A DNA stretch of 64,000 nucleotides from Macrostomum lignano (GCA_002269645.1 NIVC01001823.1:62001-126000), one strand, 5' to 3'. Positions 2,353 through 35,927 are shown, counted from the first letter of the stretch. A program made the numbers and translations. Notes: generated by a model from the sequence alone, not told the origin.

Positions 2353-2358
2353 AGCTTG
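2353..2358 (+). other. Target-site duplication AGCTTG (left copy; right copy 12709-12714)
   Basis: The paralogous empty site reads GCAGCG-AGCTTG-ATTTTCAG (48211-48230) with a single AGCTTG. Confidence 0.93.
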
Positions 2359-2878
2359 ACTACTAAGGACTGGCAGATCCGTTGATTTTGCGAAGGTCCG
2401 TCGGGCTGATGTCGGCCTCTAGCACCGCGGCAAGGTGCTCCCTCGGGGTGTACCACCTCCCCCGGGGTGTACCTCCAGCTGGGTGGGCGTCCAGCGAGTG
2501 TACCTCCAGCTGGGTGGGCGTCCAGCGAGTGTACCTCCAGCGGGGTGGGCCTCCTGCGAGTGTACATCCGGCAGGGTGGGCGTCCAGCGAGTGTACCTCC
2601 AGCGGGGTGGGCCTCCCTCGGGGTGTACATCCGGCGGGGGGGATTCCCACTCGTGTGCACGCGGCCCCCTGTAGCAGTATGAGGCGGGGTACAGAGAGAC
2701 ACGGGGTGCTGGGACAGAGAGTGCGTGGAGGCACCCTGCGCCGCCCCGGCATGTCGCAGCACGCGGCGTGGACAGAGAGGGAGTGTGAGTCACACGGAGG
2801 GACAGAGAGCTTCCCCAGGCCGGGGTGGTAGAGGGACAGACCGGCGGTGAGTGATAGAGAGCCCCCAGGCTGCAGAGG
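2359..2878. repeat. Left terminal inverted repeat (~520 bp)
   Basis: Reverse complement of 12070-12708 apart from internal indels; GC-rich with internal ~31-bp repeats of the type GTGTACCTCCAGC(T)GGGTGGGCGTCCAGCGA. Confidence 0.93.
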
Positions 2879-2959
2879 AATTGAAAAGAAAAAACACGTA
2901 ATTCAGTTGTTTCAGGTTCAGGCCATCCGGCAAACAGAGCAAAGCTCTCCAACAGTGTT

Positions 2960-3613
2960 TTATTTAGCATAAACTACGGGGTAGCGCCCCAACACATTAG
3001 CATAGTAGCGAACAGATGCGTTCTGCAAGCAATTAACAATCAGGTAGGAGTAGGGCTCCCTAGTGGCGTCTTCGTACATTTGAACAAAACTTTTTGGGTT
3101 AGCGGGGACAAGCTGCTTTGCAATATGGGCGACTGTACTAACGTCCCGTACATTGCGGAACAATACAAGGTAGTTTGCGTTAAGGGATTGAGTGCGGTGC
3201 TCCTTGCCCTTGGCAAACAGGTTTTGTACAAGGTACCAAAGCCGGAATCCCACATTGCTGACTTTGCGAGTGAAAAATGCGGTAAAAGCAGCGTTTTTTT
3301 CCATGGCTTGCATTTGATCATCGACAACGAGTAGAATATTCGGAGCGGGAACATAGGTTTCAGGGTTAAATGTAGACGAGCGAAAATTGACAGGGTACGG
3401 TAATTCAAACAGTTCCGGGTCTTGATAGTGCCCAAACCAATCAACGCGAACAGGCTTAGGGTCCTGAAAAAACTCGTTTCGCAGCAATTCTTTAACAAGA
3501 GTTGTTTTTCCGCTCTGGTTAACACCAGCAAAAATCGCCGAAGTATTTGGAGCAAACTTTAGAGCGTCAGGATCAATTGTTTGGTACATTTTCAGGGCGA
3601 GTTGACACTCCAA
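2960..3613 (-). CDS. A32/FtsK-HerA family genome-packaging ATPase
   Basis: Walker A GVNQSGKTT, Walker B LLVVDD, and YLVQNLF...RTQSLNANYLVLFRNVRD typical of Polinton ATPases. Confidence 0.92.
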   Translation of the reverse strand: MECQLALKMYQTIDPDALKFAPNTSAIFAGVNQSGKTTLVKELLRNEFFQDPKPVRVDWFGHYQDPELFELPYPVNFRSSTFNPETYVPAPNILLVVDDQMQAMEKNAAFTAFFTRKVSNVGFRLWYLVQNLFAKGKEHRTQSLNANYLVLFRNVRDVSTVAHIAKQLVPANPKSFVQMYEDATREPYSYLIVNCLQNASVRYYANVLGRYPVVYAK

Positions 3614-3623
3614 ATATTAAAAA

Positions 3624-4061
3624 CTATTTTATTTGTAGAACATGTTTTCGAACCATCAAATCATTTTCAAGCAGATTGGTAGAGTAACATTCCCTTAAAA
3701 TCTTTTCAATCGACAACCCCTCTAAAAAGTGCTTTTCGGCCACAAAAATCACATGCGGCCCACACGCTACACTTAGAGGGTGTTGAACAGTGTGGCGATT
3801 CATAGCAACAGGTGAATGTACATGCTTCGAGATCCAAGCCGAGAGCAATTCCGGCACGGGTTCAATACACAGGGGGTCAAAAAATGTCACACTCTTATCA
3901 TCGTGTAGGCAAATCAGTCCCCAGTGGGTGCCTGGCAGATTGCCCGTGTCAAAATTAATTACATATGCAGCAGGGTAAACAGGTGCAGGAATTCTGTCAA
4001 GAGGGCAAACGCGCACTTCCACAGGTAGTTTTAAACGTTCCAAAATTTCCAACGTGTCCAT
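3624..4061 (-). CDS. Adenain-like (C5 family) cysteine maturation protease
   Basis: Catalytic motifs GTHW, FFDPL and Q...SVACG. Confidence 0.9.
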   Translation of the reverse strand: MDTLEILERLKLPVEVRVCPLDRIPAPVYPAAYVINFDTGNLPGTHWGLICLHDDKSVTFFDPLCIEPVPELLSAWISKHVHSPVAMNRHTVQHPLSVACGPHVIFVAEKHFLEGLSIEKILRECYSTNLLENDLMVRKHVLQIK

Positions 4062-5337
4062 ACGTAGTCCAGAATGGGCTGGCGGCCTCTAGTGATTTGC
4101 ACCGCGTTGTCAAAGTAACCAAACACCAAAACGTTAATCCCGACAGGTAGGGCTGCAGAAAACTTTATCTGTAGGGTAAGATTCCCTCTCTCGCGAGGCA
4201 TGCTATGTCCACCCAGTTCCATGTCGGGCATTAGATTCCACGCAAATAAACAGTAACCAGCGCGATAATCCGAATATGACAGGTCAATGTCCAAATCACG
4301 ATTCATTTTCCCTAGGCTCTTAAACAGCATGGCGTATTCGCGAGCATAGTTTTGGGCAGCGAACCTTGGAGTGAATGGTTGACCGCACAGGCTGACCCCG
4401 TCCTTGTACAGGGCCACACTGTCCGCCCCAAATGGCTCGAAATTGAACGGATTATGGGTGGCCACCCCGTTATATGCGGCACTATTTACCATCCCCATAA
4501 TGACAAGTTTGGGCTTCTGTTCCGGGAAAATATTATTGATTGACACGTCGCGAACTCCTACAGCGACAGAGGTGTTGTGTACAACGAGGCGCTCGATGGG
4601 GTAGACTGCATTCTGAGTTGCCAGCTGTTCTTCAATCTCCAAGGCCAGTTGGGGGTTAGCCTTTACCCGACGAACGTGTAATTTTGCACTTTGAAGAACC
4701 AACTTTGCATCAACCCCTTCGGCGTGATTCTCCACAACGAATCCAGAATTTTGCAGAGTGAGCGTAACCATATCAGTGTAGGGTAGCAGCATACGATCGT
4801 TGGTGACAAAAAAGTCGAGACTAAGAGGGCCATACAGATGAAATGTTCGAGAACCGGCAGCCATCGCCTTGCGAGTTACAAAGCCAGGATTTCCAACCGC
4901 AGCCATTTGACCCCCAGCGTCTTTAGCGTAGCCCATCATCCGCAGTTGGTTAGACTTTGAATCAGACCCATAACTCAAGCATGTACGAATGTACGCCTTG
5001 TAGGCGTGGTTGTTGTTGCTAGACTCGATATGTGTACCATTTATGGAAAGAGACACGTTTTTGAACATGGTCTCCAGAGGTAATTGATTGGCGCCACGTT
5101 TGAATCCGCCGCCAAATCGGCTCCATTAGCTCTCTTAATACAACCTTTAATCTCGAGATCAATGTCATTAAGATCGACAAACGTCTCGCCGCCCACAATT
5201 CTAAACTCGACCACACTCGCATTTTCGACGCTGGCAACCGGGTGGATTTCTTCAGTAGTTGAACCTACAGCGGCAATCTGGTGGGCTCGAGGGGCAAAGA
5301 GCTCAAACTCGGACTTTGTACACAGACACTCGGACAT
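4031..5337 (-). CDS. Double jelly-roll major capsid protein (PY/hexon), one frameshift near 5078
   Basis: N-part MSECLCTKSEFELF...VEFRI...FVDLNDIDLEIK (5041-5337) joins C-part (L)ETMFKNVSLSINGTHIE..NNNHAYKAYI...NPFNFEPF...GYCLFAWNLMPD (4031-5068) across a 1-nt indel. Confidence 0.9.
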
Positions 5338-5366
5338 GTTTAGTAGACAGACTCGATTCGGCGAAT

Positions 5367-5711
5367 CTAATTGAAGCGGGGCTTTTTATTTATAGTGCTG
5401 AAAATGTCTGAATTGAGACGCTTCGGAGCCTTTTTTCTTCTTCGTCCGCTACCCCTTTGGGTAACCGTGTCTTTAAAGGCGTCCTTGGCAGCCTGAACAG
5501 AATTGCGCAGGACAGACTCTTTCAAATTGCCTCCTTGCTCGAGGCTATCGTTAACCGTAGTTGCTAGGGCTCTAGTACCATGACGGAGAATGTTTTTACC
5601 AAAACTCTTTAGAATTGGCAGCGCGAAGCGGGCAATGCTTCCAAACAAACCGTTGCCCCTCTGGGCGCCTGCGAAAACAGGCAAAGCTCCACCAATCAGA
5701 ATAGAAGGCAT
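5367..5711 (-). CDS. Small virion-type protein with QRGxG motifs, amphipathic helix and basic C-terminus
   Basis: LIGG and QRGNGLFGSIARFALPILKSFGKNIL; RRRKKAPKR near the end; position next to the MCP as in many Polintons. Function is inferred. Confidence 0.65.
   Translation of the reverse strand: MPSILIGGALPVFAGAQRGNGLFGSIARFALPILKSFGKNILRHGTRALATTVNDSLEQGGNLKESVLRNSVQAAKDAFKDTVTQRGSGRRRKKAPKRLNSDIFSTINKKPRFN
5383..5394 (-). promoter_or_regulatory. TATAAATAAAAA (TATA box plus AATAAA) upstream of MCP
   Basis: About 46 nt before the ATG at 5337. Confidence 0.5.
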
Positions 5712-5749
5712 GATTAAGCACTAGGATATAGTTTACTGAGGCTGTGTTG

Positions 5750-5759
5750 TTTATTTATA
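5750..5759 (-). promoter_or_regulatory. TATAAATAAA overlapping the penton stop, upstream of ORF 5711
   Basis: Minus strand CTATAAATAAAC; includes the TAA stop of the penton. Confidence 0.5.
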
Positions 5760-6890
5760 GCTTCTTTTCGCGGATGTTAACGCTCAAGACGGTCTTGCCC
5801 TCATTACTTTTGTCATATCCCTGCCCATATCATCGTTAATTTGTACTTCAATAGTTTTGAATGGGTGCTTAACCAGTGGTAGATATGCCGGATTGACAAA
5901 CTCGTAGTACTCGCGACCGCCCTGAACTTTGGGATCCATCGGTATAGCCCCAACAGAGGAACTTTAACGTCTCCTACAATAACAGAATCGACTATGCTCG
6001 AATAGATGTACATTGTTTGTATTCCACCGGTTAATTCCATTGATGCGTTTGCGTAGAATTCCGATATACCGAAAAATGGGGTTGTATAATCATGCTCTGG
6101 GAAACCAAGCACGCTGGTCAAGCGCCCCAGCCCAAACATGTAATCCGTCGAGCCAATGTAATAACACCTATTCGTAACTTCGCTGTATCTGAAAAAGTCC
6201 GTTCTAGTGCTGGAGCCGCTATGAGATCTTTGATATGTTTCCAAATTATATCGTTGAGTTCCTCCACCAATCTTTTAGGTGTACTATAGTATCCTCCCTG
6301 CATAAAAAAGATTTGATCAGACGCTGCGCTAGTAACTTGTCTTATTATTGGAGCATGGTCCATTGACTGTACAGTCGGTTCCTCAACAACTGCGGTGATG
6401 GAGGCTGCACACCCCGCGTGTAATACGAGTTCAGTAGGTAGATCCTCATTAGACTCGAAGCCGGCGACTAGTTTAAACACCTTGGGTAGGGTATCCGGGA
6501 ATTTGATGCCGACGGTGGATTTTGAAGTATTCACAATCATAAAGGCGGTTGGGGATGTTCTTAAAAAGACAATTTTCTTATTATCCCCTTCAACGTATCG
6601 GATACCGTTTAGAAAGCCGGAAATACATTCTTCAGGGGTTTTCAGACCCGCTGCGAGACAAAGTTTGCAAACGACGAAGCCGTCAAGAGGCCCTCCTGTT
6701 CGCGAATGGTGATCGGTATAGATTTTTTGAAAGATTCAAATTCTTTGGTAAAGTAGATCCGTTCGAGGCAAACCTCATGATTCGGAAAGTGGAGAGTGTC
6801 CGGTAAATTAATAAAATAATGAGCCGGATTATTTTCGGGATAGTGCTCGGGGCACGCATTGCTAGGCAGAAAGAGATGCATGGTAGCCAT
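5755..6890 (-). CDS. Minor capsid protein (PX/penton), several frameshifts
   Basis: N-terminus LFLPSNACPEHYPENNPAHYFINLP..EVCLERIYF. C-terminal YIYSSIVDSVIVGDVKVPLL, EFVNPAYLPL..FKTIEVQINDDMGR and GKTVLSVNIR are read across frames (shifts near 6655, 6200, 5950, 5800). Confidence 0.82.
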
Positions 6891-6893
6891 GCA

Positions 6894-7981
6894 TTAGTTA
6901 TTATTACGTTGACGTATATTTATAACTTCATTTACAGGTACAAATGAATTAAAAGTGTCGGGATAACCGCGCCAGCTAACGTAATGGTGCGCAACACCAT
7001 TTATTAACACGTTTCTACGCAAAACTTTATTGATTACAAAACGCTCGGGTCGGGTAGATTTGGACAGTTCATTGTAGTAAAACCGTCCCTCAATCACTTC
7101 ACCAGACAAATCAGAAATACGATAAAAATGTGGGGGTCCAGGACAAACTTTGGATATAATGTACACCTCCTCACTATACATGTCGTACGCCTCCTTGTCG
7201 AATGCCCTGCGAGATTTCGAAATTCTCACAAAATCCCCCTTTTTATATACGGGGTCGTCTTTTTGCTGATCCGGGTAGAGCTTTTCCCACACACGCTTCT
7301 GATTGTGGAACCCGAACTTGACGGTTTCATCTCAATAGTAGAATGCGTCGTGTTGTTGTAATTGCCTACCAAATTAGGTAAGTAGTCAACCCAACGCCAC
7401 GTGTTGTTGTGCTCAAAGTAGCGAGCCAGACGCTTTCGAAGAGTTCTAATCAGCCTCTCGGCCATGTTTGCCTTGTACACAGAGTTGGTGCTGTACATTT
7501 TAACATTATTGTCTTTTAGTATGCGGCGCATTCGCTGATTATAAAACTCGGTACCCCGATCCACGTGAAGGTAAAGGGGGCGGGCAGGGAAATCATTCGC
7601 CAACATTGACTCAAACGCTGCGGGGGTATCACTCTTTAGTTTAATTGCCCTACAAAAAGCCTGCTTACTAAGCACATCAATAATAACTAGTATATATTTA
7701 TGTCCGTCATTCCAACGTTTGTATCGCGACATGTCCATCAAATCGGCTTGTAGAGTTTCCATGAATCCTCCCGACATTACTTTTCCCGTTTTAAATGTCC
7801 TGTTGACTCTCCGGTGACGGGTGTAACTCGGTTGGGTTTCTAGCCATTCCCTGGTTTGGCGTCTTGTCAGGTTTGGCGCCAGACGTTTGGCCTCCTGATA
7901 GACACGGGCAGCATTTGAAAAAGCGGCGGCTCCTTGTTCGTAAACTCGACGAAGAGCGGTTAGAGCCCTCATTGACAACAA
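6894..7981 (-). CDS. Retroviral-like (rve, DDE) integrase with C-terminal chromodomain, frameshift near 7300
   Basis: LQADLMDM..YILVIIDVLSK, HVDRGTEF, KANMAERLIRTLR, NYNNTTHSTIEMKP; the 6894-7292 ORF carries GDFVRISK...YVSWRGYPDTFNSFVP (chromodomain). The true start may be near 8069. Confidence 0.93.
6915..6924 (-). promoter_or_regulatory. TATAAATATA upstream of penton
   Basis: About 25 nt before the ATG at 6890. Confidence 0.5.
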
Positions 7982-8103
7982 GTGTGGATGCGCAGCATGA
8001 ATAGTTGCACGTAATGTCGGCTGGGGAGTTGTCTACACAAAGCTTTGACGCGGCGGCTGCTGCGCCCATGACCGCCGGGCGCGGTTATGTATGGATTAGG
8101 GTT

Positions 8104-8112
8104 CTATTTATA
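8104..8112 (-). promoter_or_regulatory. TATAAATAG upstream of integrase
   Basis: About 35 nt before the ATG at 8069. Confidence 0.45.
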
Positions 8113-8144
8113 AAGAGTATCGTATTTTCGGTTCCGGGGCGGTC

Positions 8145-8731
8145 TTAGTTGGTAATCGTGATATTTACCCATCCCGGCACCTTGATCCACAAGTTGGGCA
8201 TAGCATTTACACCTTTGTTGCGCGTGGTCGTTAAATCGCGGGTGTCTGTCGCAATTGTGTGCTCATATTCATCGCGGTAATCATCGGTACCAACCATATG
8301 GTCAACCTTCTTTTCCTCCACAGGGAGCTGTTTCCGGCCGAGCATAGACATTGGTATACGGGCCTTGTCTAGCAGAGCCCAGAAAGCGGTCGAATATTTC
8401 GGGTGATTATTAGTGTTGGTGGTGACGGCTTGTAGAAGATCAAAAACGTTGCTACCACCCCAAGTTTCACCATCAAAAACGACTTCCCACGATTGGTTGT
8501 AATTTAGGCTGGGGTGCTTTTCTGTTAGTATATTCCATATACGTTGTTGCCTATCAGAAAATAGCTGCTTTGTCGTCTTTGGGGTTTTACTTTAGCCAAT
8601 TGGGTCTGTAGCTTTGCATTGTACTCTACAAGTTTTTCGTACTCCGATTTTGGGGCAATTTCTCGCGGAGTACCCTGTCTAAGCTGATTGAATTCCTCCT
8701 CGGGGACCACAACGTACTTGTCCATTTTCAA
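8145..8731 (-). CDS. Polinton-type hypothetical protein, frameshifted
   Basis: Fragments MKMDKYVVVPEEEF..., ...VVFDGETWGGSNVFDLLQAV...FWALLDKARIPMSM... read across ORFs 8525-8731 and 8145-8351; resembles an uncharacterised Polinton protein from memory. Confidence 0.45.
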
Positions 8732-9116
8732 CGTCGTTGTCCTAGCAGACCACCAAACAGTCCAGTGATTAACGGTGCAGCAATCTTGGCGAGAATTGGT
8801 AGGAATCCTCCAACTTGAGGGTCCGATAGTATCATATTCTTCTTCCTATTTATAGACAGTTTTTTGTCGGCCATGTCATGCAGGGCTTCTCTATAACGTT
8901 TCAACCTTGCAAACTGTCTAGGGGATAGATCGATATTGCCCTTGAGTACATTGTACTTAACTCGCACAGACACTGCATCAACTCATTATCGGCTCCCCTA
9001 ATAATGGCCCTCCTTCGATGTGGTCGCGCGTCACCGAGCTCCTCTAGCTCGCGACGGCAAGAACAAAGACGAGAAATTCCGTTTGTCATTATTAAGGTGG
9101 TAAGCATTGCGTGCAT
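8728..9116 (-). CDS. Small basic protein with adenovirus pX-like GGFLP tail, frameshift near 8958
   Basis: RRAIIRGADNELMQCLCEL joins YNVLKGNIDLS...QVGGFLPILAKIAAPLITGLFGGLL by a 1-nt indel; GGFLP..I.AP resembles the adenovirus pX C-terminal segment. Confidence 0.65.
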
Positions 9117-9132
9117 ACATGTGCATATTTTG

Positions 9133-9142
9133 TTTATTTATA
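9133..9142 (-). promoter_or_regulatory. TATAAATAAA between the TBP-like and pX-like genes
   Basis: About 17 nt before the ATG at 9116. Confidence 0.5.
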
Positions 9143-9154
9143 AGCAAAGCATAA

Positions 9155-9673
9155 TTAGAGTTGCAGAATAGCAGTCACGTGGTCGTACATTTTACACAGT
9201 TCGTCATAGTTTCGTATTCCTAGGAACACTAACCGACCATTCTTTCCGCACAGCAGGCACTTGGCCTTGCGGAATGGGGACTTTATTACAAGCCCATTGA
9301 ATACCTCACTCTCCCACTCAACCCAGCGCGAGCTCGAGTTGGCAAGGCGGAAAAAGTTTGGCTTAACATTAACTTCTGCACGATAAGTACCGGTAGTGAT
9401 AACAACAGAGTTTGGTTTACATTGAGCAAAAAGACGCAGCACATCGTTGGTTGATTGGCAACCAAAAACAATGGCAGATAATGAACGTTTGAAAAAGTTT
9501 ATTGTACACTTTCCGATCCTCAGGTTGTACAATGCCCGGGGTCTATGAAACGTTCTAGCGCGCGCCCAGTCCAAGTTCGGTAGGCTGTTCCACCTTGCGC
9601 AAAACACCCTGTTTACGCACACGACGTTCTGCAAGCGGTTTTTTCGGTTGCTTTTGTTTCCGCTCAGCTCCAC
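9155..9673 (-). CDS. Divergent TATA-binding protein (TBP)-fold protein
   Basis: LQNVV matches TBP LQNIV; [47 protein letters not shown] matches TBP [46 protein letters not shown]; length about one TBP core. Aligned by eye. Confidence 0.65.
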   Translation of the reverse strand: [172 protein letters not shown]

Positions 9674-10264
9674 CAGCTCCGCGCTTGCGTCCTACCTTGA
9701 TTTTTAACGGTGGAATCCAGTAGCAGCGGTCAAACGCCTGCTTGGGAGCTTCTATGAATTGCAGTTGTTGAATTTTTGGTACCGCGGTTAGAACCGAGTC
9801 GTGAATCACCGCCGTGTCTAGGGCGAACAGTACTCTATAGTAGCCCGTCTTGTTCTTGTAGTCGACAACTTGCCGCTCTTGTCGTACATTTTAAAGTCGT
9901 GAGCCAATCCGAATGCAGCGCTGTCGCAGCCAAAAGTGGGGTTGTACCCCAATAGCGCCATTCCTTGGATAGAGAGCTGGTGACACACGGAATTAAACGC
10001 TTCTGGTATGCAGCTCTCCAAGTGCTTTTGGGAAAGAATGATGAATTCGCGGCCTTCATTGTCGGTTCTCACACCCTTGACAATCAGTACGGGCGTCGCA
10101 TTGGCAAGATAGAGAGGGCCCTGTTCGTCGTACTCAATGTCGTACGTCTCGGTTCCGTTGTAGCTTGGACCTCTCGACTTGAGAGAGAATAGGTCGATCC
10201 TAACACTATTGTAGTCTTGAACGGTATCCATGTTGCTGCTGCTGTTGCTGAGAGTGGGTCTCAC
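9555..10264 (-). CDS. Hypothetical protein, possibly an OB-fold ssDNA-binding protein; frameshift near 9870
   Basis: ORFs 9818-10264 and 9555-9809 join as KMYDKSG/VVDYKNKTGYYRVLFALDTAVIHDSVLTAVPKIQQLQF, a pattern reminiscent of T7 gp2.5-like/NCLDV SSBs. Weak, by eye. Confidence 0.35.
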
Positions 10265-10336
10265 ACCCTGAGCGCCTCCTTATATACCCTTGGGGCGGAG
10301 GGTGGGGTGGCTGGGCGTTTTTGTTATAGTGCTTCT

Positions 10337-10840
10337 TTAACGACACTTTCCGGTGTTGGAAATCCGGAAAAAAATAAACCTTTTGTTTCGATCTTCTGGT
10401 CGAGGGGTTTGAGGCGTGTCGTTAATGCAGCTGCAGTGAGGGTTGATAGTCAACTTCGCTAGCACTGGTCTACTGTGTTTAGGTCGCCAAATCCTTTGGT
10501 GTTCCGTCCACGAGGGAGCAATCGGCTGGTGATTCCGGTACCGTATTTTCTCACGATGATCCTCTTGTAATATTGGGGCAATTATCTGCTCCATTCTTTG
10601 AAGATTGGCTTTGAAATGCATCTTGTCTCTAAAGTAGTAGTCAATTCGGGCATCTGTATATTCTTGGGTGCTGTAAGGCCCTTGCCCAATTTCGTCTACC
10701 TCGACATTAAAGGTGACTAATCGTTCGGGAATTGGTTTGCCGTGACAAATGCATAACCAGTCTGTGGACTTTTTCAGGGTCTCGTACTCTGCCCTTTCTT
10801 TGCTCGATAAAAGCGGGTAGTCTCGAGAAATCCAGCTCAT
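10337..10840 (-). CDS. Hypothetical protein of the Polinton
   Basis: 167-aa ORF, same strand, stop/start overlap with 10837-11214; no recognised motif. Confidence 0.45.
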   Translation of the reverse strand: MSWISRDYPLLSSKERAEYETLKKSTDWLCICHGKPIPERLVTFNVEVDEIGQGPYSTQEYTDARIDYYFRDKMHFKANLQRMEQIIAPILQEDHREKIRYRNHQPIAPSWTEHQRIWRPKHSRPVLAKLTINPHCSCINDTPQTPRPEDRNKRFIFFRISNTGKCR

Positions 10841-11214
10841 TCCTCTGACTCGTCAGATTCGTCGAGAAAGAAATAGTGGAAGAAATTGTCGACTCTATTC
10901 TTTTCAACTGCACAAAGTATTTTGTCTGACAGGTGAAATTCACAGTCTCCTTTTACGTACAGGCGCTTCCCGTCGATAACTTTGATAGATGCGCCGCCTC
11001 CGAGATCGTAATCTGTGCAGCTAGTGCCCAGAAATTTCATTCGATGCCATTGTGCTCGACTAAACACGGCTCCTGGACAGCTACAGTTTTGACAGTGGAT
11101 GCGGAAACGCGGCTTGTTTGGGTCCCAATATCCCACTTCCAGCACTGCGTTGTCAACGTGGGTGTACACTATTTCCGATTGCCAGTACATTTCGATATTG
11201 TTGAGAAATACCAA
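10837..11214 (-). CDS. Hypothetical protein, possibly PC4/Whirly-like fold, acidic tail
   Basis: LEVGYW..RFRIH....PGAVFSRAQWHRMK weakly resembles the PC4 pattern GISL..EQW..L; likely ATG at 11190. Confidence 0.4.
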   Translation of the reverse strand: MVFLNNIEMYWQSEIVYTHVDNAVLEVGYWDPNKPRFRIHCQNCSCPGAVFSRAQWHRMKFLGTSCTDYDLGGGASIKVIDGKRLYVKGDCEFHLSDKILCAVEKNRVDNFFHYFFLDESDESEE

Positions 11215-11215
11215 T

Positions 11216-11229
11216 TTTATTTATTTATA
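11216..11229 (-). promoter_or_regulatory. TATAAATAAATAAA overlapping the predicted Fic stop
   Basis: About 26 nt before the ATG at 11190. Confidence 0.5.
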
Positions 11230-12021
11230 GGCTGCCGTCTGAACAGATTTCCAACCATTCCCTCCACTGTAGAACGGTTCTCTCAATTGATAAAAGTAAA
11301 TACGCCGCTAGGAGCCCCCGTTGCTGCTGCGCGCTTCGTAAAGACAGTTGAGATATGTGTCTCTATTTGCATACGCAAATGATACGGGTTCTGGCAGAAT
11401 CCGGTTGAGCAACTTTGATAATAACAACCTAGCAGTTCTACCATTGCCGTCGCTAAAGGGGTGTATGGTGAGAAACTTTTCTAGGAAATATGCTCCTGTC
11501 ACTACTGCATTACGCAAGATTTGAGGCTCTTTTATGTCTCTAGTTAATTTTACCAGCTGCCGTTCGATATTTTCTGGGGCACTGTAATACATACTCGCGC
11601 CTGCTGGCTTAGCGTGCTTAATTCTATACGATCCCGCATTCGGGAGCAGTCCTCTGCACACGCGTGTGTGAACTTGTCTAACAAACTCTGTGTCAATTAA
11701 CCCCCTCGTGTCATTGAGGTGTATTGCCGCACTCCATAGATTGGCTGTGACCATACAGGACCGGGTTTTTATCGCTTCTTCTGCTTCCTCCCAAGTCAAC
11801 GCCACCTCTCTCTCCTCAATGTTTACTTCTGTTACGAATGCCAGCCGTGCTAGATGTGTGAATTCTAAGCGCTCCTTTGCGGTCAATCCCGCGATTCTTT
11901 TCCTAGTGTCTGATAACAATCTTTCAATGAGGGGTAATCTGGCGCGCACGCTCTCGTTGCTGAAATAGGGGTTATCAGTTATACCCTCTTCCATGTTCTC
12001 CATACAGAGGGTTTTGTACAC
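11225..12021 (-). CDS. Fic (Fido) domain protein, predicted AMPylase; last helix apparently frameshifted near 11320
   Basis: Canonical HPFSDGNGRTAR motif, GSYRIK loop and RDTYLNCLYEA; an alternative frame continues GLLAAYLLLSIERTV...CSDGSL to TAA at 11225-11227. Confidence 0.9.
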
Positions 12022-12069
12022 TGCTTCTATTTATGGTTGAATTAACACGTTGCTCGCGGCCTGTCTGTC

Positions 12070-12708
12070 CCTCTGCAGCCTGGGGGACTCTCTATCACTC
12101 ACCGCCGGTCTGTCCCTCTACCACCCCGGCCTGGGGAAGCTCTCTGTCCCTCCGTGTGACTCACACTCCCTCTCTGTCCACGCCGCGTGCTGCGACATGC
12201 CGGGGCGGCGCAGGGTGCCTCCACGCACTCTCTGTCCTAGCACCAGCACCCCGTGTCTCTCTGTACCCCGCCTCATACTGCTACAGGGGGCCGCCTGTTA
12301 TCTGTCCCCTGCTACAGGGGGGATGGCGGCTCTCCACGCACTACCCCTCCTGCTACAGGGGCTGCTCTCTGTCCCCAGCTACAGGGCTGCATGCTCACTG
12401 TACAGGGCTGCGTCAGCATCGGGGTTCCCCCAACACTAACCGCGTGCACACGAGTGGGAATCCCCCCCGCCGGATGTACACCCCGAGGGAGGCCCACCCT
12501 GCTGGAGGTACACTCGCTGGACTCCCACCCTGTCGGATGTACACTCGCGGGAGGCCCACCCCGCTGGAGGTACACTCGCTGGACGCCCACCCCGCTGGAG
12601 GTACACCCCGGGTGTACACCCCGAGGGAGCACCTTGCCGCGGTGCTAGAGGCCGACATCAGCCCGACGGACCTTCGCAAAATCAACGGATCTACCGTTGC
12701 TTAGTAGT
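12070..12708. repeat. Right terminal inverted repeat (~640 bp)
   Basis: Inverted copy of 2359-2878 with an extra internal segment at about 12290-12440. Confidence 0.93.
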
Positions 12709-13639
12709 AGCTTGATTTTCAGTCTGGGATTTAAGCCTGATGGAGTTTCAGTAGACATGGGCTTACATTATACACTGGTACAGTCTCGGAATGTTAAAAA
12801 GTAATCAGTGAGAACACATCCACTCAGATATCTACCCAGACTGCCACCTGGACATCCGCAACACGCATCTATTGCGCATCCACCACGCATCCATCCAAGC
12901 ATCCGCCCACGCATTAACCAATAACTCTACCCAGGCATCCACCAATATCTTCACACACGCATCCACTCACGCATCAAAATAATGCACCTATCTAAGTATC
13001 CACCCATTTGTTCAAAGCAAGTTACAGTTGAAACAAGTCTTCTAATGCGAATTAAAGTGTAACAAATCAAACTGCAGTGTTTGACTAGAGGTTGGGCCTG
13101 CTGGTAGTTCAAGGGTTCCTAGTTAATAACGTGTTGAATTACGATAAAAATCATTATTTTCAAAAGAAAATGTTACATGAAGACACAGTAAAAAGGTTTG
13201 GTTAGTCTGTGCTCAAAACTGACGCAATGAAAATGACATCAAACGAAGTCTTGAAGCAGACGGCAAACGAGGATCAGCACATTCTGCAATAAGCAACAAA
13301 AATGTTGGAAGGAAAAGCTTTTAAGCCAAGGCAAGCCGCCCAGTGCTTCTTCACTGCATTCAGAAATGAATTCTTACAGAAGTTGATTCTGTTGATCGCT
13401 GAAATTTTTATTGAATAATGACATAAAGCCAGAGTATCATTTACAATCGGGCATGTCTTGTTAAGCCATTCTGCTAATTGATTAAGGTGCGAAATTCCCA
13501 ACACCTCGTCAATCATGACGCGCGAAGCAGTCAACTGAGATGCTGAGTTGTGTTACACAGGTAGTTCATAAACTGTTTTGGAAACGGAGGTCACTTCCTC
13601 ACAGCTGGCTTATACATTACAATTCTCAAATCCCATCAA

Positions 13640-13870
13640 CAGATTCCAGAATCCCATCATCAACCATCCCAGAATCCCATCATGAACCATCACAGAATCC
13701 CATCATGAACCATCCCAGAATCCCATCATGAACCATCACAGAATCCCATCATCAACCATCCTAGAATCCCAACATCAACCATCCCAGAATCCCATCATGA
13801 ACCATCCCAGAATCCCATCATGAACCATCCCAGAATTCCATCATTAACCATCCCAGAATCCCACACCAAC
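13640..13870. repeat. 23-bp minisatellite CATCCCAGAATCCCATCATGAAC
   Basis: Direct inspection; shorter copy at about 48565-48730. Confidence 0.85.
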
Positions 13871-14269
13871 CATCTCACTATCCCATAATCAACCGATCCC
13901 AAAATCCCGACTTCAACCGATCCCACTATTTTTGAAATAACCTCAAATCAAAATATTTGATTCTGTATCAAAACCTGATCGATAAACAAACAATTTCACT
14001 TCTTATTTTCATTGCTTCATCACTCACAGCGGATCCGCTTCTTTCTCCATCAACGCCAGCCGTGATGGCCTCCAGCATCCGCTTCTGCTTGGCCGCCTGA
14101 CTCCGCTGGTACTCGTGCTTGAGCACCAGGGTGCCGACCTCCGATTTGAAGTCGCGAACTTCGTCCAGCAGCCGCTCCAGCCGCTCCTTGCTGGTGTCCC
14201 GGCGCAGCACGAAGCTGCGGCTCTGCAGCGGGTGGCCGGCGGCGCCTGCGCCAGACTGGGCGGCTGAAA

Positions 14270-14850
14270 TGTTTGAGGGGCCGCCGTTCATTTGAGGGGG
14301 CGCCATTCATTTGAGGGGCTGCCGTTCATTTGAGGGGCTGCCGTTCATTTGAGGGGCGCCATTCATTTGAGAGCGCCATTCATTTGAGGGGCTGCCGTTT
14401 ATTTGAGAGGCCGCCATTCATTTGAGAGCGCCATTCATTTGAGGGGCTGCCGTTCATTTGAGAGGCTGCCGTTCATTTGAGGGGCTGCCGTTCATTTGAG
14501 GGCTGCCGTTCATTTGAGGGCTGCCGTTCATTTGAGGGGCTGCCGTTCATTTGAGGGCTGCCGTTCATTTGAGGGGCTGCCGTTTATTTGAGGGGCTGCC
14601 GTTCATTTGAGAGGCTGCCGTTCATTTGAGAGGCTGCCGTTCATTTGAGGGGCTGCCGTTTATTTGAGGGGCTGCCGTTCATTTGAGAGGCTGCCGTTCA
14701 TTTGAGAGGCTGCCGTTCATTTAAGGGGCTGCCGTTCATTTGAAGGGCTGCCGTTCATTTGAGGAGCTGCCGTTCATTTGAGGGGCTGCCGTTCATTTGA
14801 AGGGCGCTATTCATTTGAGGGGCGCCATTTATTTGAGGGGCGCAATTTCA
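14270..14850. repeat. 19-bp minisatellite TTCATTTGAGGGGCTGCCG
   Basis: Direct inspection; only about 3 units at 49100-49160. Confidence 0.9.
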
Positions 14851-14864
14851 TTTAAGGAGGCGCC

Positions 14865-15425
14865 AGAACCAGGGGCCTTAGCACCAGGGGCTTTAACACC
14901 AAGGGCTTTAGCAACAGGGGCTTTAGCACCAGAAGCTTTAGCACCGAGGGCTTTAGCACCAGAATCCCAGGGGCTTTAACACCAGGGGCTTTAGCAACAG
15001 GGGCTTTAGCACCAGAAGCTTTAGCACCGAGGGCTTTAGCACCAGAATCCCAGGGGCTTTAACACCAGGGGCTTTAGCACCAGGGGCTTTAGCACCAGGG
15101 GCTTTAGCACCAGGGGCTTTAGCACCAGGGGCTTTAGCACCAGGGGCTTTAGCACCAGGGACGCCAGCACCAGGGGCTTTAGCAACAGGGGCGCCAGCAC
15201 CAGGGGCGCCAGCACCAGGGGCGCCAGCACCAGGGGCTTTAGCACCAGGGGCTTTAGCACCAGGGGCTTTAGCACGAGGGGCTTTAGCACTAGGGGCTTT
15301 AGCACCAGGGGCTTTAGCACCAGGGGCGCCAGCACCAGGGGCGCCAGCACCAGGGGCTTTAGCACCAGGGGCTTTAGCACCAGGGGCTTTAGCACCAGGG
15401 GCGCCAGCACCAGGGCCGCCAGCAC
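14865..15425. repeat. 15-bp minisatellite AGCACCAGGGGCTTT
   Basis: Direct inspection. Confidence 0.9.
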
Positions 15426-16204
15426 ACCAACAGCTCCAACTCACAAACAGCTTCAACTCACCTTTCCCAGGCTTGGCGGCCCTCTGCCTCTCCATGGCCC
15501 CAGCGTAGAGGTACCGGCAGTCCGGGCTGTGCTGCAGCGCCAAGAAGCCCAGGAAGGGCGGCAGCGACTTGCCGATGTCCTGGTGCGCGTGGTCCACGCA
15601 GCTCTGGCGCCAGGCCTGAGTCGGGATGAGATGAAGAGAGAGAATATTTTTTACAGTTGATTTGCTGATCGCTCTACTATGAGTAGTTTATGTCATGGTG
15701 GGGACTACTGGCAGTTCCATGCTCCATCAGCTCACTCCAGCTGCTCAAACCGGACTCACCAGAGAAGTCCTCCTCAGGGTGTCCTTGGCGGCGGCCGCCA
15801 CCCGGCTCTGCAGGCCGTTGCAAAACGCGGCCTCAGCCTCCAAGTTGTCCAGCTGGTTGATGAGGGCCGCCGTCTCGGACATGTTCGAGTCTCTCAGGGC
15901 GAGACGGAGAGTCCTGCGAAGCTGCTTGGCCGTCTCGCAGGACTGATGCAGAGTGAGCTGCTGCCACGCGATGCTGAGGTCGAACTGACCGATGCACTCC
16001 AGCAGCTCCTGGCTGGCTTGGCTGGCCACGTCCTGCGGTTCGTGTCATGGAATTCGGTCATGGGCAATTGCATTCGGTCATAGGCAATTAAATTCGGTCA
16101 TAGGCAATTAAATTCGGTCATAGGCAAATACATTCGGTCATAGGTAATAAATATAGCAGAGACTATCGGTTTAAATCACCCGACGGCATCACAGAGCCAT
16201 GAAC

Positions 16205-33900: not shown

Positions 33901-35927
33901 AGCGGGAGCAGGTGAGTGAGGCTGGGTTCATCATCAGAATGCTGAGATCCGCATGCAACTGGAAGCCCATTAACTTTGCTCAATTTTAAATTCGCAACTG
34001 AGTGGCGCCCAGCCTCCAGCAGCTTCTGTGACTGCGAATGTCGGCTTGGGTGCTGAAACAAGCGGCAGGCGAAATTGAAAAGAAAACTCTGATGCCGATT
34101 TGCTGAGCCGGGCCATTGGGTTTTGAATTCACAGGCTCCGATGGTAGCAGAGTGGGTGCAGCGGTGCTTGGGTGACCTACGATAGGCAGCATGACTCTGC
34201 TGAGGTGCTGCTGCTCTCACTTGGAAAATTTCAAACAAAATAAACCGAAGCCGCCCTGACTGCCTGATTGGTGCCTTGCTGCGGGGCACTGAGTCCTGAT
34301 AATAACTTGTCGACAATCAAATGACACGGCCTCAATCGAACGATATCTTAAATAATTTTCATATTTTTTTCTTAATGATATAACTTGAAATTCCCAACCA
34401 GCCAAGCCAAAAACTGCAGTTTCAAACCAACCCATGTTTTTCACTCCCCACAAAGCCATTTTCCGCTCACTGCGCTCTGCAGGCAGCCAACCTGCTGTGA
34501 CAGCCACGGCGTGCGGTGTGCGGCCTGCACAGGACACGTGCCATGCGATCCAGTGCTGCAGCAGTTTCTGTGAGGACAGAATTAGAAAACTGCTTCCATT
34601 CGGTGCTGATGTTCACCTCATTCGGGCGACCAGACCGAGCTCGACCAACGAGCTCAGAGTGAGCTTCAGCTTCCAAGAAAAATACATCATGAGACGGCTG
34701 AGCACAGTCCAGGGCCAGCTGTTTACACTCATCAAGTTCATCTTCAAGAGACACTTGCCGCTCAATCTGGACACACCTGGACTCAAGACCTACCATGCAA
34801 AGACTCTGCTCTTCTTTATGCTGGAGAAGCATGGCACAGATCCTGAAACTGGCGCTTGGCAGCCCCACAATCTGATCGCTCTGCTTAAGGAGTCTCTCGA
34901 CAGGATGCTGAGCTTCATCGACTCGAGCAGCTCGCCCGATGAGTGCATGCCGCACTTCTTCATGCCCGACGCTCCGCTCTACTTCAAGAACGCTGGAATC
35001 GGCGGCGACTTCGACAACACAAAGGCGAGGGTTCGAGACCGACTTTGTGAGCTGAGAAGCGACGTCGGCGGAGTGGCCGAGCAGCTGAGGAGACTCGTGA
35101 GACCTCTGCAGTCAGAGAAGTTCTACTTTTACATGTTCACTCTGCTGCCTCTGACAGCGCCGCCTGCTGTCACGGAGATCAGGAAAGGAATGTATTCTCC
35201 AAAAATGTACTACAAGTTTGCAGACGTTTACAGTGTGGTGCACCAGTGTGTGAGCGAGCTGCAGTCGGAATCGAGCGACAGAGACACCCTGATGAGGCAG
35301 CTCAGTCTCCTTCATGAGCTGCAGTGGTGCAAGTGCGCCGCCCTGTGCATGACCGCCATGGCGCATTTGAAGTTCGGAGAATCTGAGGAGGCTGAAAGAC
35401 TCGCGATGGAGCTGCAGAGACATCAGGTTGAGTATCAGGTTGATTCAGGGTTGAAGCCACAGAATATTGAAACAGATCAATTTAGGTCTACTGAATTGCC
35501 ATCAGACTCAGACTGGGCGTGGAGGTTCTGCCTCCCCTGCGACTCTCCGCCTCGCTTCCCATTCCTTCCCGAGTTCACGCAGACTCTGTTCACAGCCAGA
35601 CTGTCGCAGCCTCTCTCCTCCCACCTGTACGTGAACTTCCGCTGTCTGAGCTGGAGTCTCCAAGCTGAGCTGCTCCGCAATCGCGCACCTGCAATCGCAT
35701 TCGATCATTGGATTGAACAGCTGCTTGGAGACCCGGACTTGGAGGAGCTGCTCACTCTGGCTCACTACAGCGACTGCCGCGAGCACGTGGAGCTCAGCCT
35801 GCAGCAGATGGAGATGATCGAGAAAGAGAGACGCGTCGCCATGGAGACACAGGACGAGGAGAAGATCGGTTGGGTCAGGCAGAAGCTGAAGAGACTTGAT
35901 GAAGCCCGCCAGAGTCCTCAAAATTGA
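30930..35927 (+). CDS. Ankyrin-repeat cGAS-like receptor (Mab-21 nucleotidyltransferase), copy 1
   Basis: Phase-consistent exons 30930-32590 (38-aa repeats plus canonical ANK TALMLAA..GH), 33063-33116, ~33467-33911 (GSYAEGW...DSDID) and 34483-35927 (QDTCHAIQC, ELRVSFSFQE, KTYHAKTLLF, CMPHFFMP). Confidence 0.78.
33222..33480. repeat. 50-bp intronic tandem repeat (paralog 63290-63650)
   Basis: Unit CTCTCAGCTCTCCTGCTTGAGATGCCAGTCTGAGTGCTGCAGCAGCTGCA. Confidence 0.88.

What the first reader, a model, noticed from the sequence alone, without database searches (positions are those of the whole stretch)
2359..12708. Compact Polinton/adintovirus with a full virion module and integrase but no DNA polymerase
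Seen: both TIRs and the TSD are present, and the interior is tiled almost without gaps by 13 same-strand ORFs (ATPase, protease, MCP, small protein, penton, integrase, hypothetical, pX-like, TBP-like, SSB-like, hypothetical, PC4-like, Fic). No pPolB, helicase or remnant of either is visible, and the largest gap is under 200 bp. Established: Polintons/adintoviruses are defined by a protein-primed PolB of about 1000 aa and are usually 15-20 kb. Inference: this may be a helper-dependent (satellite-like) integrating virus lineage that packages and integrates itself but borrows a polymerase, rather than a random deletion derivative.
Basis: partly seen in the sequence, partly recalled or inferred. 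Interest (0 to 1): 0.9.

Follow-up and report, generated by a model that had tools for sequence, protein, structure and literature searches.

The report
Polymerase-less Maverick virus element in flatworm
This is an integrated 10.35-kb Maverick/Polinton-type virus-like element of the flatworm Macrostomum lignano that keeps capsid, packaging and integrase genes but has no DNA polymerase, and a second copy elsewhere shows this polymerase-less form has itself been spreading.

Summary
Window 2359-12708 has 0.5-0.6-kb terminal inverted repeats (TIRs) ending in ACTACT and a 6-bp target-site duplication (TSD), AGCTTG. The interior is gene-dense, with no gap over about 100 nt.

All genes lie on the minus strand: Fic, g2, g3, g4/TBP-like, g6, g7, rve-chromo integrase, penton, a small protein, a double jelly-roll major capsid protein (MCP), an adenain-like protease and an A32-like ATPase.

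No protein-primed polymerase (pPolB) or remnant exists anywhere in the 64 kb. A PolB HMM scored E = 0.94 at best. The same PolB query readily found PolB in all five MCP-relative contigs over 11 kb.

The host is Macrostomum lignano. A second copy at an unrelated locus is collinear over 10.1 kb (about 97.5% identical). Differences between the copies are mostly synonymous (dN/dS 0.18; MCP 0.02), so the PolB-less form evolved under selection. A divergent relative, L009, shares the accessory block with no PolB between Fic and integrase.

Corrections: as assembled, 8 genes of the window copy carry about 12 small frame-shifting indels but no nonsense substitutions, so long-read errors are possible. 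The SSB-, PC4- and pX-like labels are unsupported.

A helper-supplied polymerase is the best but untested explanation. This is a new variant of a known kind.

The parts
2353..2358 (.). Left target-site duplication, AGCTTG
   Evidence: Identical hexamer directly outside both TIR ends.
2359..2866 (.). Left terminal inverted repeat. Starts with ACTACTAAG and contains 5.5 copies of a 31-nt tandem repeat at 2467-2639. GC about 62%.
   Evidence: Inverted-repeat pairs I1, I2, I4, I9; tandem repeats; composition.
2960..3613 (-). Genome-packaging ATPase (A32/FtsK-HerA type), intact in the window. Walker A is GVNQSGKT and Walker B is LLVVDD.
   Evidence: Homologous to the ATPase of PolB-bearing relatives (E 3e-23). 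In the family alignment A4, 12 of 18 members hit Pfam Pox_A32 and 6 hit Adeno_IVa2. The window protein alone gives only weak AAA hits.
3624..4061 (-). Adenain/Ulp1-like cysteine protease, 145 aa, intact. Carries THW...Q-x6-CG motifs.
   Evidence: Pfam Peptidase_C48 at E 0.009, below the cut-off. 73% identical to the L003 protease. More distant relatives carry weak Peptidase_C5 hits.
4031..5337 (-). Major capsid protein (double jelly-roll). The window copy has one frame-shifting indel; the L008 copy is an intact 427-aa ORF.
   Evidence: Homologues of 427-440 aa. An AlphaFold model of P0001 (81% identical; pLDDT 85) matches PBCV-1 Vp54, SGIV, mavirus and Sputnik MCPs at E 1e-14 to 1e-18. The best BFVD hit is a Maverick-derived protein in Cotesia bracovirus. 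Frame count.
5367..5711 (-). Small 114-aa protein between penton and MCP, intact. A conserved position in relatives; presumed virion or core protein.
   Evidence: 73% identical to the corresponding ORFs in L009 and L003. No family hit.
5755..6890 (-). Penton-like minor capsid gene. The window copy is broken by 2-3 frame shifts and L008 by 1.
   Evidence: Homologous to the gene(s) between integrase and MCP in L009, L010, L003 and L001. Frame counts. The fold was not tested.
6894..7993 (-). Retroviral-type (rve, DDE) integrase with a C-terminal chromodomain. There is one frame change between core and chromodomain in both M. lignano copies; relatives have a single 355-361-aa ORF.
   Evidence: Pfam rve at E 7.7e-10; Chromo at E 0.058. 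Homologues P0080-P0084 are 67-71% identical. Frame counts.
7791..8069 (-). Conserved 92-aa Cys-rich ORF starting MGAAA (N-myristoylation-like). It overlaps the 5' end of the integrase gene in another frame.
   Evidence: Conserved in L009 (49% identical) and L010. Translations.
8104..8731 (-). g7: conserved gene of unknown function (210 aa in L008), possibly a scaffold or core protein. The window copy has 2 frame shifts.
   Evidence: Homologues in L009 (50% identical) and L004. Only weak Pfam hits such as T4_CASP. Frame counts.
8728..9116 (-). g6: conserved small protein (129 aa in L008) shared with PolB-bearing adintovirus-like contigs. The window copy has 1 frame shift.
   Evidence: Homologues in L009, L001 (E 4e-14) and L004. 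Frame count.
9155..9691 (-). TBP-like ORF. It has no ATG of its own and overlaps the end of g4 in another frame. The same arrangement is seen in L008 and L009.
   Evidence: Pfam TBP at 22.6-22.8 bits against a cut-off of 22.9. PDB TBP chains hit at best E 0.0035, through the shared FxGL...G+xVxxG motif. 67% identical to the L009 ORF. The AlphaFold single-sequence model failed.
9555..10346 (-). g4: lineage-specific gene of unknown function (263 aa in L008). The window copy is frame-shifted (2 frame-disrupting indels).
   Evidence: Only 3 hits among 1.84 billion representative proteins. 54% identical to L009. No Pfam, PDB or PHROGs hit.
10324..10840 (-). g3: lineage-specific gene of unknown function (171 aa in L008). 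The window copy has 1 frame shift near the 3' end.
   Evidence: Homologue in L009 (44% identical). Frame counts.
10837..11214 (-). g2: 125-aa ORF of unknown function with an acidic tail, intact.
   Evidence: No family or PDB hit. Not found in L009, which has a 98-aa ORF at that position.
11225..12003 (-). Fic/Fido-domain protein with the canonical HPFSDGNGRTAR motif. The window copy has 1 frame shift near the 3' end; L008 has the intact 259-aa form, annotated as BOX15_Mlig029518g1.
   Evidence: Pfam Fic at E 3.5e-14. 97% identical to P0029. Bounds.
12083..12708 (.). Right terminal inverted repeat. Ends ...CTTAGTAGT, contains 31-nt tandem repeats at 12465-12606, and has about 140 nt extra relative to the left arm.
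12709..12714 (.). Right target-site duplication, AGCTTG

Best explanation
The element is an integrated member of a family of compact (about 10.3 kb) Maverick/Polinton-type, adintovirus-like endogenous viruses of the flatworm Macrostomum lignano.

Shown:
- It carries a full virion module: a double jelly-roll MCP, a penton-like gene, small core-like proteins, an adenain-like protease and an A32-like packaging ATPase.
- It carries an rve-chromodomain integrase.
- It carries a lineage-specific accessory block: a Fic AMPylase-type protein, a TBP-like protein and g2-g4.
- It has no protein-primed polymerase or terminal protein, and no other recognisable replication protein.
- It has Maverick-style ends: long TIRs, a trinucleotide repeated twice at each terminus, and a 6-bp TSD.
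- The PolB-less architecture is shared by at least two copies at unrelated loci, and these diverged under purifying selection.

Inferred: its linear DNA is copied by a protein-primed polymerase with fused terminal protein supplied in trans by a PolB-encoding Maverick in the same cell. The DNA is then packaged by the element's own capsid and ATPase and inserted by its own integrase. That would make it a satellite-like, helper-dependent integrating virus.

The window copy itself is either slightly decayed or carries long-read assembly indels.
For: - Boundaries: TIRs and TSD.
- Virion and integration genes: DJR MCP; ATPase family; integrase and Fic.
- No PolB anywhere in the window. As a positive control, the same PolB query finds PolB at E 1e-91 or better in all five MCP-relative contigs longer than 11 kb.
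- Second copy: L008 is collinear over 10.1 kb at about 97.5% identity, with unrelated flanks.
- Selection: 54.5 synonymous against 34.5 non-synonymous differences, dN/dS 0.18, binomial p 2e-15; MCP 17 against 1. The same reasoning was used for vertebrate Mavericks in PMC8097293.
- Divergent relative: L009 has the same accessory block and no PolB between Fic and integrase.
- Termini: they begin with (ACT)2, and (ACT)3 in L008. A trinucleotide repeated twice is the conserved end-motif of vertebrate Mavericks (PMC8097293). From established knowledge of adenovirus and phi29-type replication, such reiterations serve protein-primed initiation by sliding or jumping back.
- In polintons the terminal protein is a domain of pPolB (PMC11161782), so both functions are missing here together.
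- No hairpin-forming ends were found that would allow self-priming.
Against: - No helper was identified. M. lignano assemblies could not be searched for pPolB genes or for other elements with ACTACTAAG termini.
- The L009 contig ends inside its inverted Fic gene, so a PolB beyond it is not excluded. The age of the PolB-less state is therefore unknown.
- Both M. lignano copies show a frame change in the integrase and one in the penton gene. If these are real and ancestral, the element would also need integrase and penton supplied in trans.
- Divergence is uneven along the element. Some of the synonymous-biased differences could have been imported by recombination with other, possibly PolB-bearing, relatives.
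- Four accessory proteins (g2, g3, g4, g7) have no assigned function, and one of them could be a novel replication initiator.
Confidence: 0.5

Rival explanations
1. Recent non-autonomous deletion or rearrangement derivative. An ordinary 15-20-kb M. lignano Maverick lost its PolB end in a single event, perhaps the same rearrangement that inverted Fic relative to L009. The copies seen are short-lived passengers amplified in trans, with no independent evolutionary persistence.
For: - polB-lacking polinton derivatives that amplified alongside polB-bearing relatives are reported in Pieris mannii (10.1101/2025.02.07.637071).
- Fic has the opposite orientation in L009, so this end of the genome has been rearranged.
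- All long contigs of MCP relatives carry PolB.
- The two copies differ by only about 1.2% in the interior.
- The window copy carries about 12 frame shifts.
Against: - Differences between the two PolB-less copies are strongly biased towards synonymous changes (dN/dS 0.18; MCP 0.02). This is not expected for passengers whose proteins are dispensable.
- No deletion scar was found. The space between the TIR and the integrase is filled by conserved genes shared with L009.
- There are no nonsense substitutions.
Confidence: 0.25
2. Self-sufficient small nuclear DNA virus that uses host DNA polymerases. One of the unassigned proteins (g2, g3, g4/TBP-like or g7) would act as an origin-binding or initiator factor, so no helper virus is needed.
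For: - Four conserved proteins have no assigned function, and g4 and the TBP-like ORF are lineage-specific.
- The TIRs carry 31-nt tandem repeats that could be binding sites.
- From established knowledge, small DNA viruses of similar size (polyoma-, papilloma- and parvoviruses) lack polymerases.
Against: - Those viruses all encode a helicase or nickase initiator, and none is detectable here.
- The termini keep the trinucleotide reiteration typical of protein-primed genomes.
- The termini do not fold into hairpins.
Confidence: 0.15
3. Assembly artefact: the PolB region was collapsed or dropped when the repeat was assembled.
For: The two copies differ by many 1-bp indels (33 of 41 indel events have lengths that are not a multiple of 3), with none of the nonsense substitutions that real decay should also produce. 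This suggests consensus errors in long-read assemblies.
Against: Two copies at loci with unrelated flanks give the same continuous 10.1-kb layout. A third M. lignano gene model (UniProt A0A1I8G3E6) is built from the same accessory genes. Indel errors do not remove 3-4 kb.
Confidence: 0.03

Closest known systems
Mavericks/Polintons of animals (adintoviruses; class Polintoviricetes)
   Same: - DJR MCP most similar to Maverick- and adintovirus-type MCPs.
- Penton, adenain-like protease and A32-like ATPase.
- rve-chromodomain integrase.
- The integrase-penton-small-MCP-protease run is in the same order as in the PolB-bearing relative L001, whose ATPase lies elsewhere.
- Long TIRs, a 6-bp TSD, and a trinucleotide repeated twice at each terminus.
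   Different: - No pPolB or terminal protein, which defines the group (PMC5499653 abstract).
- 10.35 kb, against the usual 13-25 kb (PMC10748475).
- The end motif is (ACT)2 rather than (AGT)2 or (AG)3.
- The accessory block of Fic, g2-g4 and TBP-like was found in none of 80 metagenomic MCP relatives.
polB-lacking polinton derivatives reported in the butterfly Pieris mannii (Pannagram preprint, 10.1101/2025.02.07.637071)
   Same: Polinton-derived insertions that lack polB yet have amplified, which raises the same question of how they are mobilised.
   Different: There polB loss coincides with a LINE or gypsy insertion, and highly similar polB-bearing copies are present. Here no foreign insertion or scar is seen, the space is filled by conserved genes, the copies show purifying selection, and a divergent relative shares the block.
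[quoted passage not shown]
   Same: Small genomes with a DJR MCP, penton and ATPase (with or without a protease). Many lack pPolB, and some depend on another virus.
   Different: PLVs mostly lack rve integrase and encode other replication proteins such as primase-helicases or pPolB-S1H (PMC11161782). Here rve is present and no replacement replicase is found. The hosts are protists or giant viruses rather than an animal. MCP sequence relatives of this element are PolB-bearing adintovirus-like contigs.
Capsid-less transposon-like Polintons (Krupovic, Bamford and Koonin 2014, PMC4028283)
   Same: They show that Polintons can shed whole functional modules.
   Different: The loss described there is of the capsid, protease and ATPase module, with PolB and integrase retained. 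This element is the mirror image.
Helper-dependent viruses such as dependoparvoviruses (a functional analogy only; from general knowledge)
   Same: They encode their own capsid and can integrate, but need functions from a co-infecting virus.
   Different: They are unrelated in sequence and in replication mechanism. Dependoparvoviruses still encode a Rep initiator.

Membership tests
Polinton/Maverick (adintovirus) | [quoted passage not shown] | tested here: not met
   tblastn gave a best E of 2.1. A PolB HMM run against all six-frame pieces gave a best E of 0.94. Pfam scans were negative. Positive control.
Polinton/Maverick (adintovirus) | Retrovirus-like (rve) integrase | tested here: met
   Pfam rve at E 7.7e-10, above the cut-off. 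There is a weak chromodomain signal. As assembled, the gene has one frame change.
Polinton/Maverick (adintovirus) | Double jelly-roll major capsid protein | tested here: met
   A model of the 81%-identical homologue P0001 (pLDDT 85) matches PBCV-1, SGIV, mavirus and Sputnik MCPs at E down to 3e-18. BFVD hits include a Maverick-derived bracovirus protein and MELD or adintovirus entries.
Polinton/Maverick (adintovirus) | Penton (single jelly-roll minor capsid protein) | tested here: inconclusive
   It is homologous to the gene between integrase and MCP in L001, L009 and L010. There is no family hit and the fold was not modelled.
Polinton/Maverick (adintovirus) | FtsK/HerA (A32-like) packaging ATPase | tested here: met
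   Walker A and B motifs are present. 12 of 18 members of alignment A4 hit Pox_A32 and 6 hit Adeno_IVa2. The window protein alone gives only weak AAA hits.
Polinton/Maverick (adintovirus) | Adenain/Ulp1-like maturation protease | tested here: inconclusive
   Peptidase_C48 at E 0.009, below the cut-off. His and Gln...Cys-Gly motifs are visible in the sequence. Relatives carry weak Peptidase_C5 hits.
Polinton/Maverick (adintovirus) | TIRs of 100-1500 bp, a 5-8-bp TSD and short reiterated terminal motifs | tested here: met
   TIRs are 508 and 626 bp, the TSD is 6 bp, and the termini are (ACT)2. Definitions come from PMC10748475 and PMC8097293.
Polinton/Maverick (adintovirus) | Size of 13-25 kb | tested here: not met
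   10,350 bp.
Polinton-like viruses (PLV) | No pPolB and no rve integrase; an alternative replication protein (primase-helicase, pPolB-S1H or PolA-S3H) | tested here: not met
   The rve integrase is present and no alternative replicase was detected.
Non-autonomous (helper-mobilised) Polinton derivative | An autonomous partner in the same genome with matching termini | not testable with these tools
   No eukaryotic genome collection can be searched here. There is no PolB elsewhere in the 64-kb window.
Non-autonomous (helper-mobilised) Polinton derivative | Several copies of the same truncated layout at independent sites | tested here: met
   The window copy has a TSD. The L008 copy has unrelated flanks. 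A further M. lignano gene model derives from another copy.

The most novel reading that the evidence does not exclude
This represents an evolutionarily persistent clade of satellite-type adintoviruses, present in flatworms and in environmental metagenomes. The clade would have discarded the whole replication module (pPolB with terminal protein) but kept a selected virion module and integrase. It would also have acquired a Fic plus TBP-like accessory block, relying on PolB-encoding Mavericks for genome copying. That would be a capsid-encoding, polymerase-less parasite of other Mavericks.
Probability: 0.3. Interest if true: 0.75.

Novelty: new variant of a known kind. Interest (0 to 1): 0.6.

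Why it matters
Polintons/Mavericks are defined by their own protein-primed polymerase. The losses described so far either remove the capsid module or are ad hoc polB deletions.

A compact form that keeps capsid, packaging and integrase genes under purifying selection, while carrying no replication gene at all, would show that virus-on-virus dependence exists within animal Mavericks. It would parallel satellites and virophages. It would also widen what should be searched for when Maverick-like elements are catalogued, because PolB-based screens miss it.

The finding adds Macrostomum lignano, a laboratory flatworm model, to the hosts with apparently young Maverick-type insertions. It also flags a Fic enzyme and a TBP-like protein as virus-borne accessory genes.

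Tried and rejected
- Close relatives in IMG/VR: none found with the MCP, integrase or g4 as query.
- Exact-sequence look-ups of 9 distinct element proteins from the window and L008: none is in the collection. P0095 is not on record for contig look-up.
- Rfam: no hits in the window.
- AlphaFold on the TBP-like ORF as a single sequence: pLDDT 43, unusable.
- PDB, Pfam and PHROGs searches of g2, g3, g4, g6, g7, the penton and the small protein: nothing usable. I therefore rejected the labels 'SSB-like', 'PC4-like' and 'pX-like'. As a control, Pfam readily finds a real PC4 domain in another ORF of the window.
- Hairpin telomeres: the termini fold no better than shuffled sequences, so rolling-hairpin self-priming was rejected.
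- Introns as the cause of the integrase frame change: rejected. The unaligned stretch is shorter, not longer, than in the single-ORF relatives.
- Fic neighbours: the contexts of the closest outside Fic proteins are a giant-virus contig and unrelated contigs, not related elements.
- Complete TIR-bearing genomes among the relatives, to compare termini: none of the contigs has TIRs.
- 80 JGI metagenome loci with MCP relatives: all are distant (22-34% identical) and none carries the accessory block.

Full report

The boundaries are as described.
- Inverted-repeat arms lie at 2359-2866 and 12083-12708, 96-99% complementary. Each holds about five copies of a 31-nt tandem repeat.
- Both arms end in ACTACTAAG, and the hexamer AGCTTG sits directly outside each end.
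- The TIRs are GC-rich (about 62%) and the interior is about 46% GC.
- The terminal 41-mer occurs nowhere else in the window.

The interior is tightly packed, but all genes are on the minus strand. As assembled they are not 13 clean ORFs. A stop-to-stop reading shows several genes spread over two or three frames.

**2. Gene content**

Order on the minus strand:
- **Fic:** Pfam E 3.5e-14, with the HPFSDGNGRTAR motif.
- **g2, g3, g4:** no assigned function.
- **TBP-like ORF:** Pfam 22.6 bits against a cut-off of 22.9. Seventeen PDB TBP sequences hit, best E 0.0035, through the shared FxGL...G+xVxxG motif.
- **g6 and g7:** conserved in relatives, function unknown.
- **Small Cys-rich ORF:** overlaps the integrase start.
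- **rve integrase:** E 7.7e-10, with a weak chromodomain signal.
- **Penton-like gene.**
- **114-aa protein.**
- **MCP.**
- **Adenain/Ulp1-like protease:** E 0.009, with His and Gln...Cys-Gly motifs.
- **Walker A/B ATPase.**

The MCP has homologues of 427-440 aa. An AlphaFold model of the 81%-identical P0001 (pLDDT 85) matches the double jelly-roll MCPs of PBCV-1, SGIV, mavirus and Sputnik at E 1e-14 to 1e-18. Its best BFVD hit is a Maverick-derived protein in a Cotesia bracovirus.

In an alignment of ATPase relatives, 12 of 18 members hit Pox_A32 and 6 hit Adeno_IVa2.

As a control, Pfam does detect a genuine PC4 domain in another ORF of the window.

**3. No polymerase**
- A 1266-aa PolB from the relative L001 finds nothing in the window by tblastn (best E 2.1, outside the element).
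- An HMM built from the PolBs of five relatives was run with filters off against all 1793 six-frame pieces of at least 20 aa. The best E was 0.94.
- As a positive control, tblastn with the L001 PolB finds PolB at E 1e-91 or better in all five contigs longer than 11 kb that encode an MCP relative (L001, L033, L034, L040, L043).
- No gap between genes exceeds about 100 nt once gene bounds are projected from the intact copy. There is no room for a remnant.
- No helicase, primase or Rep domain appears.

**4. Host and a second copy**

The Fic ORF is 97% identical to BOX15_Mlig029518g1 of Macrostomum lignano.

The contig that carries this gene (L008; GCA_002269645.1, NIVC01001485.1) holds another copy. 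It is collinear over 10,104 aligned positions at 97.4% identity, and it has no large indels and no PolB. Its flanks are unrelated to the window's flanks. The contig ends inside the far TIR, so only one terminus is visible there: ACTACTACTAAGG.

A UniProt M. lignano gene model (A0A1I8G3E6) is stitched from a TIR ORF, the end of g2 and g4. It differs from both copies, which indicates at least one more.

No paper in the searchable library links Macrostomum with Polintons or Mavericks.

**5. State of the copies (counts only)**

| Gene | Window copy | L008 copy |
|---|---|---|
| Fic | 1 frame shift | intact |
| g2 | intact | intact |
| g3 | 1 | intact |
| g4 | 2 frame-disrupting indels | intact |
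| TBP-like ORF | intact | intact |
| g6 | 1 | intact |
| g7 | 2 | intact |
| Integrase | 1 | 1 |
| Penton | 2-3 | 1 |
| Small protein | intact | intact |
| MCP | 1 | intact |
| Protease | intact | intact |
| ATPase | intact | 2 |

- Relatives have single-ORF integrases of 355-361 aa. The integrase frame change in both M. lignano copies is therefore a break and not an intron, because the unaligned stretch is shorter than in the relatives.
- The two copies are not identical in that stretch (2 gap columns). Whether the break is inherited or independent is open.
- The window copy has no nonsense substitutions in about 2900 codons checked.
- Most indels between the copies are single bases, and about 40% lie in homopolymers.
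- This pattern fits consensus errors of long-read assemblies at least as well as it fits real decay.

**6. Selection**

I used only codons that are in frame in both copies as they stand (3093 codons). The copies differ by 54.5 synonymous and 34.5 non-synonymous changes, giving dN/dS 0.18. For the MCP the counts are 17 against 1. The binomial p is 2e-15.

Both copies share the PolB-less layout, so this divergence arose after that layout existed, and under selection on its virion genes. PMC8097293 used the same reasoning to infer propagation of vertebrate Mavericks through particles.

One caveat applies. Divergence is uneven along the element (0.2-3.2% per 500 nt in the interior), so recombination may have contributed.

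**7. Relatives elsewhere**

- **L009** (Logan run SRR23617227, 8.8 kb) is collinear. Its order is Fic (nearly full length, opposite strand, at the contig edge), a 98-aa ORF, g3, g4, the TBP-like ORF overlapping g4 in another frame, g6, g7, the small Cys-rich ORF, the integrase, two penton paralogues, the small protein and the MCP. Identities to the M. lignano proteins run from 43% to 82%. There is no PolB between Fic and the integrase. What lies beyond Fic is unknown.
- **L003 and L010** (ENA metagenomes) cover parts of the same lineage.
- **More distant MCP relatives** (22-38% identical) include classical PolB-bearing, adintovirus-like contigs. L001 has the order PolB, a 192-aa gene, ATPase, g6-like, a 275-aa gene, PLA2, integrase, penton, a 190-aa gene, MCP, protease.
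- None of the 80 JGI loci carries Fic, g2, g3, g4 or the TBP-like gene.
- g4 has only three hits among 1.84 billion representative proteins.

**8. Mechanism**

Shown: Maverick-type ends, a complete virion module, an integrase and no replication gene.

From the literature:
- Polintons by definition encode pPolB and integrase (PMC5499653).
- Their terminal protein is a domain of pPolB (PMC11161782).
- Vertebrate Mavericks end in a trinucleotide repeated twice (PMC8097293).

This element ends in (ACT)2 or (ACT)3. Its ends do not form hairpins.

Inference: the genome is still built for protein-primed copying, but the polymerase and terminal protein must come from elsewhere. The most plausible source is a PolB-encoding Maverick in the same cell. 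Packaging and integration would use the element's own proteins.

I give this about 0.5. The rivals are:
- a recent deletion or rearrangement derivative without persistence (0.25);
- host-polymerase replication with an unrecognised initiator (0.15);
- an assembly artefact (0.03).

**9. Comparison and novelty**

The element works like, and is clearly derived from, animal Mavericks/adintoviruses. It fails their defining feature (pPolB) and their size range.
- It is not a PLV, because it has an rve integrase, no replacement replicase, and an animal host.
- polB-lacking polinton derivatives that amplified are reported in Pieris mannii. There the loss accompanies a retrotransposon insertion, and polB-bearing twins are present.
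- The module loss described in 2014 was of the capsid genes, not the polymerase.

I rate this a new variant of a known kind, with interest 0.6. The main gaps are the unidentified helper and the unknown age of the PolB-less state.

Noticed in passing
window 7791-8069 (-); L009 3814-4023; L010 316-552: A conserved small Cys-rich ORF starts MGAAA, an N-myristoylation-like start. It overlaps the 5' end of the integrase gene in a different frame. It is 49% identical between M. lignano and L009, and it may be a membrane-associated virion or entry protein.
   Followed up: partly
window 9155-9691 and 9555-10346 (-); L008 11658-12849; L009 1712-2789: The TBP-like ORF has no ATG of its own in M. lignano. 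It overlaps the 3' end of g4 by 120-190 nt in another frame, and the arrangement is conserved in the divergent relative L009. This suggests splicing, a programmed frame shift or an unusual start rather than damage.
   Followed up: partly
window 56087-56557 (-) and 57140-57439 (-): There is a second, isolated fragment of a Maverick-type rve integrase, 29-33% identical to the integrases of L001, L002, L004, L005 and L072. Just upstream is an ORF with a genuine PC4 domain (Pfam E 1.2e-7). No other Maverick genes are nearby, so this may be the remnant of a different element.
   Followed up: partly
window 30930-32594, 60588-62309 (+); 34434-35927, 39412-40866 (+): The neighbouring long ORFs encode two ankyrin-repeat proteins and two Mab-21-like (cGAS-family C-terminal domain) proteins. 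These are paralogous pairs in the flanking host DNA.
   Followed up: no
L012 10001-10834; L013 4867-5700: The closest Fic proteins outside the lineage (41% identical over half the length) sit in giant-virus contigs that carry an NCLDV capsid gene. Fic genes seem to circulate among eukaryotic DNA viruses.
   Followed up: partly
L009 5000-7328; L010 1472-3719: The environmental relatives carry two tandem penton-like paralogues (347/437 aa and 364/367 aa). The M. lignano element has one.
   Followed up: no
window 2359-2400, 12667-12708; L008 9254-9300: Across the three termini available, bases 1-9 (ACTACTAAG) are conserved and so is everything from about base 27 inward. Bases 10-26 differ between the termini, even between the two ends of the window copy.
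   Followed up: no
UniProt A0A1I8G3E6 (P0095): An M. lignano gene model named 'PGA_cap domain-containing protein' is a chimera of a TIR reading frame, the end of g2 and g4 with an internal duplication. It is a mis-annotation of a copy of this element.
   Followed up: partly
window 13634-15461: Dense arrays of tandem repeats lie just downstream of the element: a 23-nt unit x12.6, a 19-nt unit x30.5 and a 15-nt unit x37.5. Very strong GC skew is also seen at 18-19 kb and 23-24 kb.
   Followed up: no
L001 5158-5670 and 13949-14476: The PolB-bearing relative contig carries two diverged, inverted copies of the packaging ATPase gene, 66% identical at the nucleotide level.
   Followed up: no
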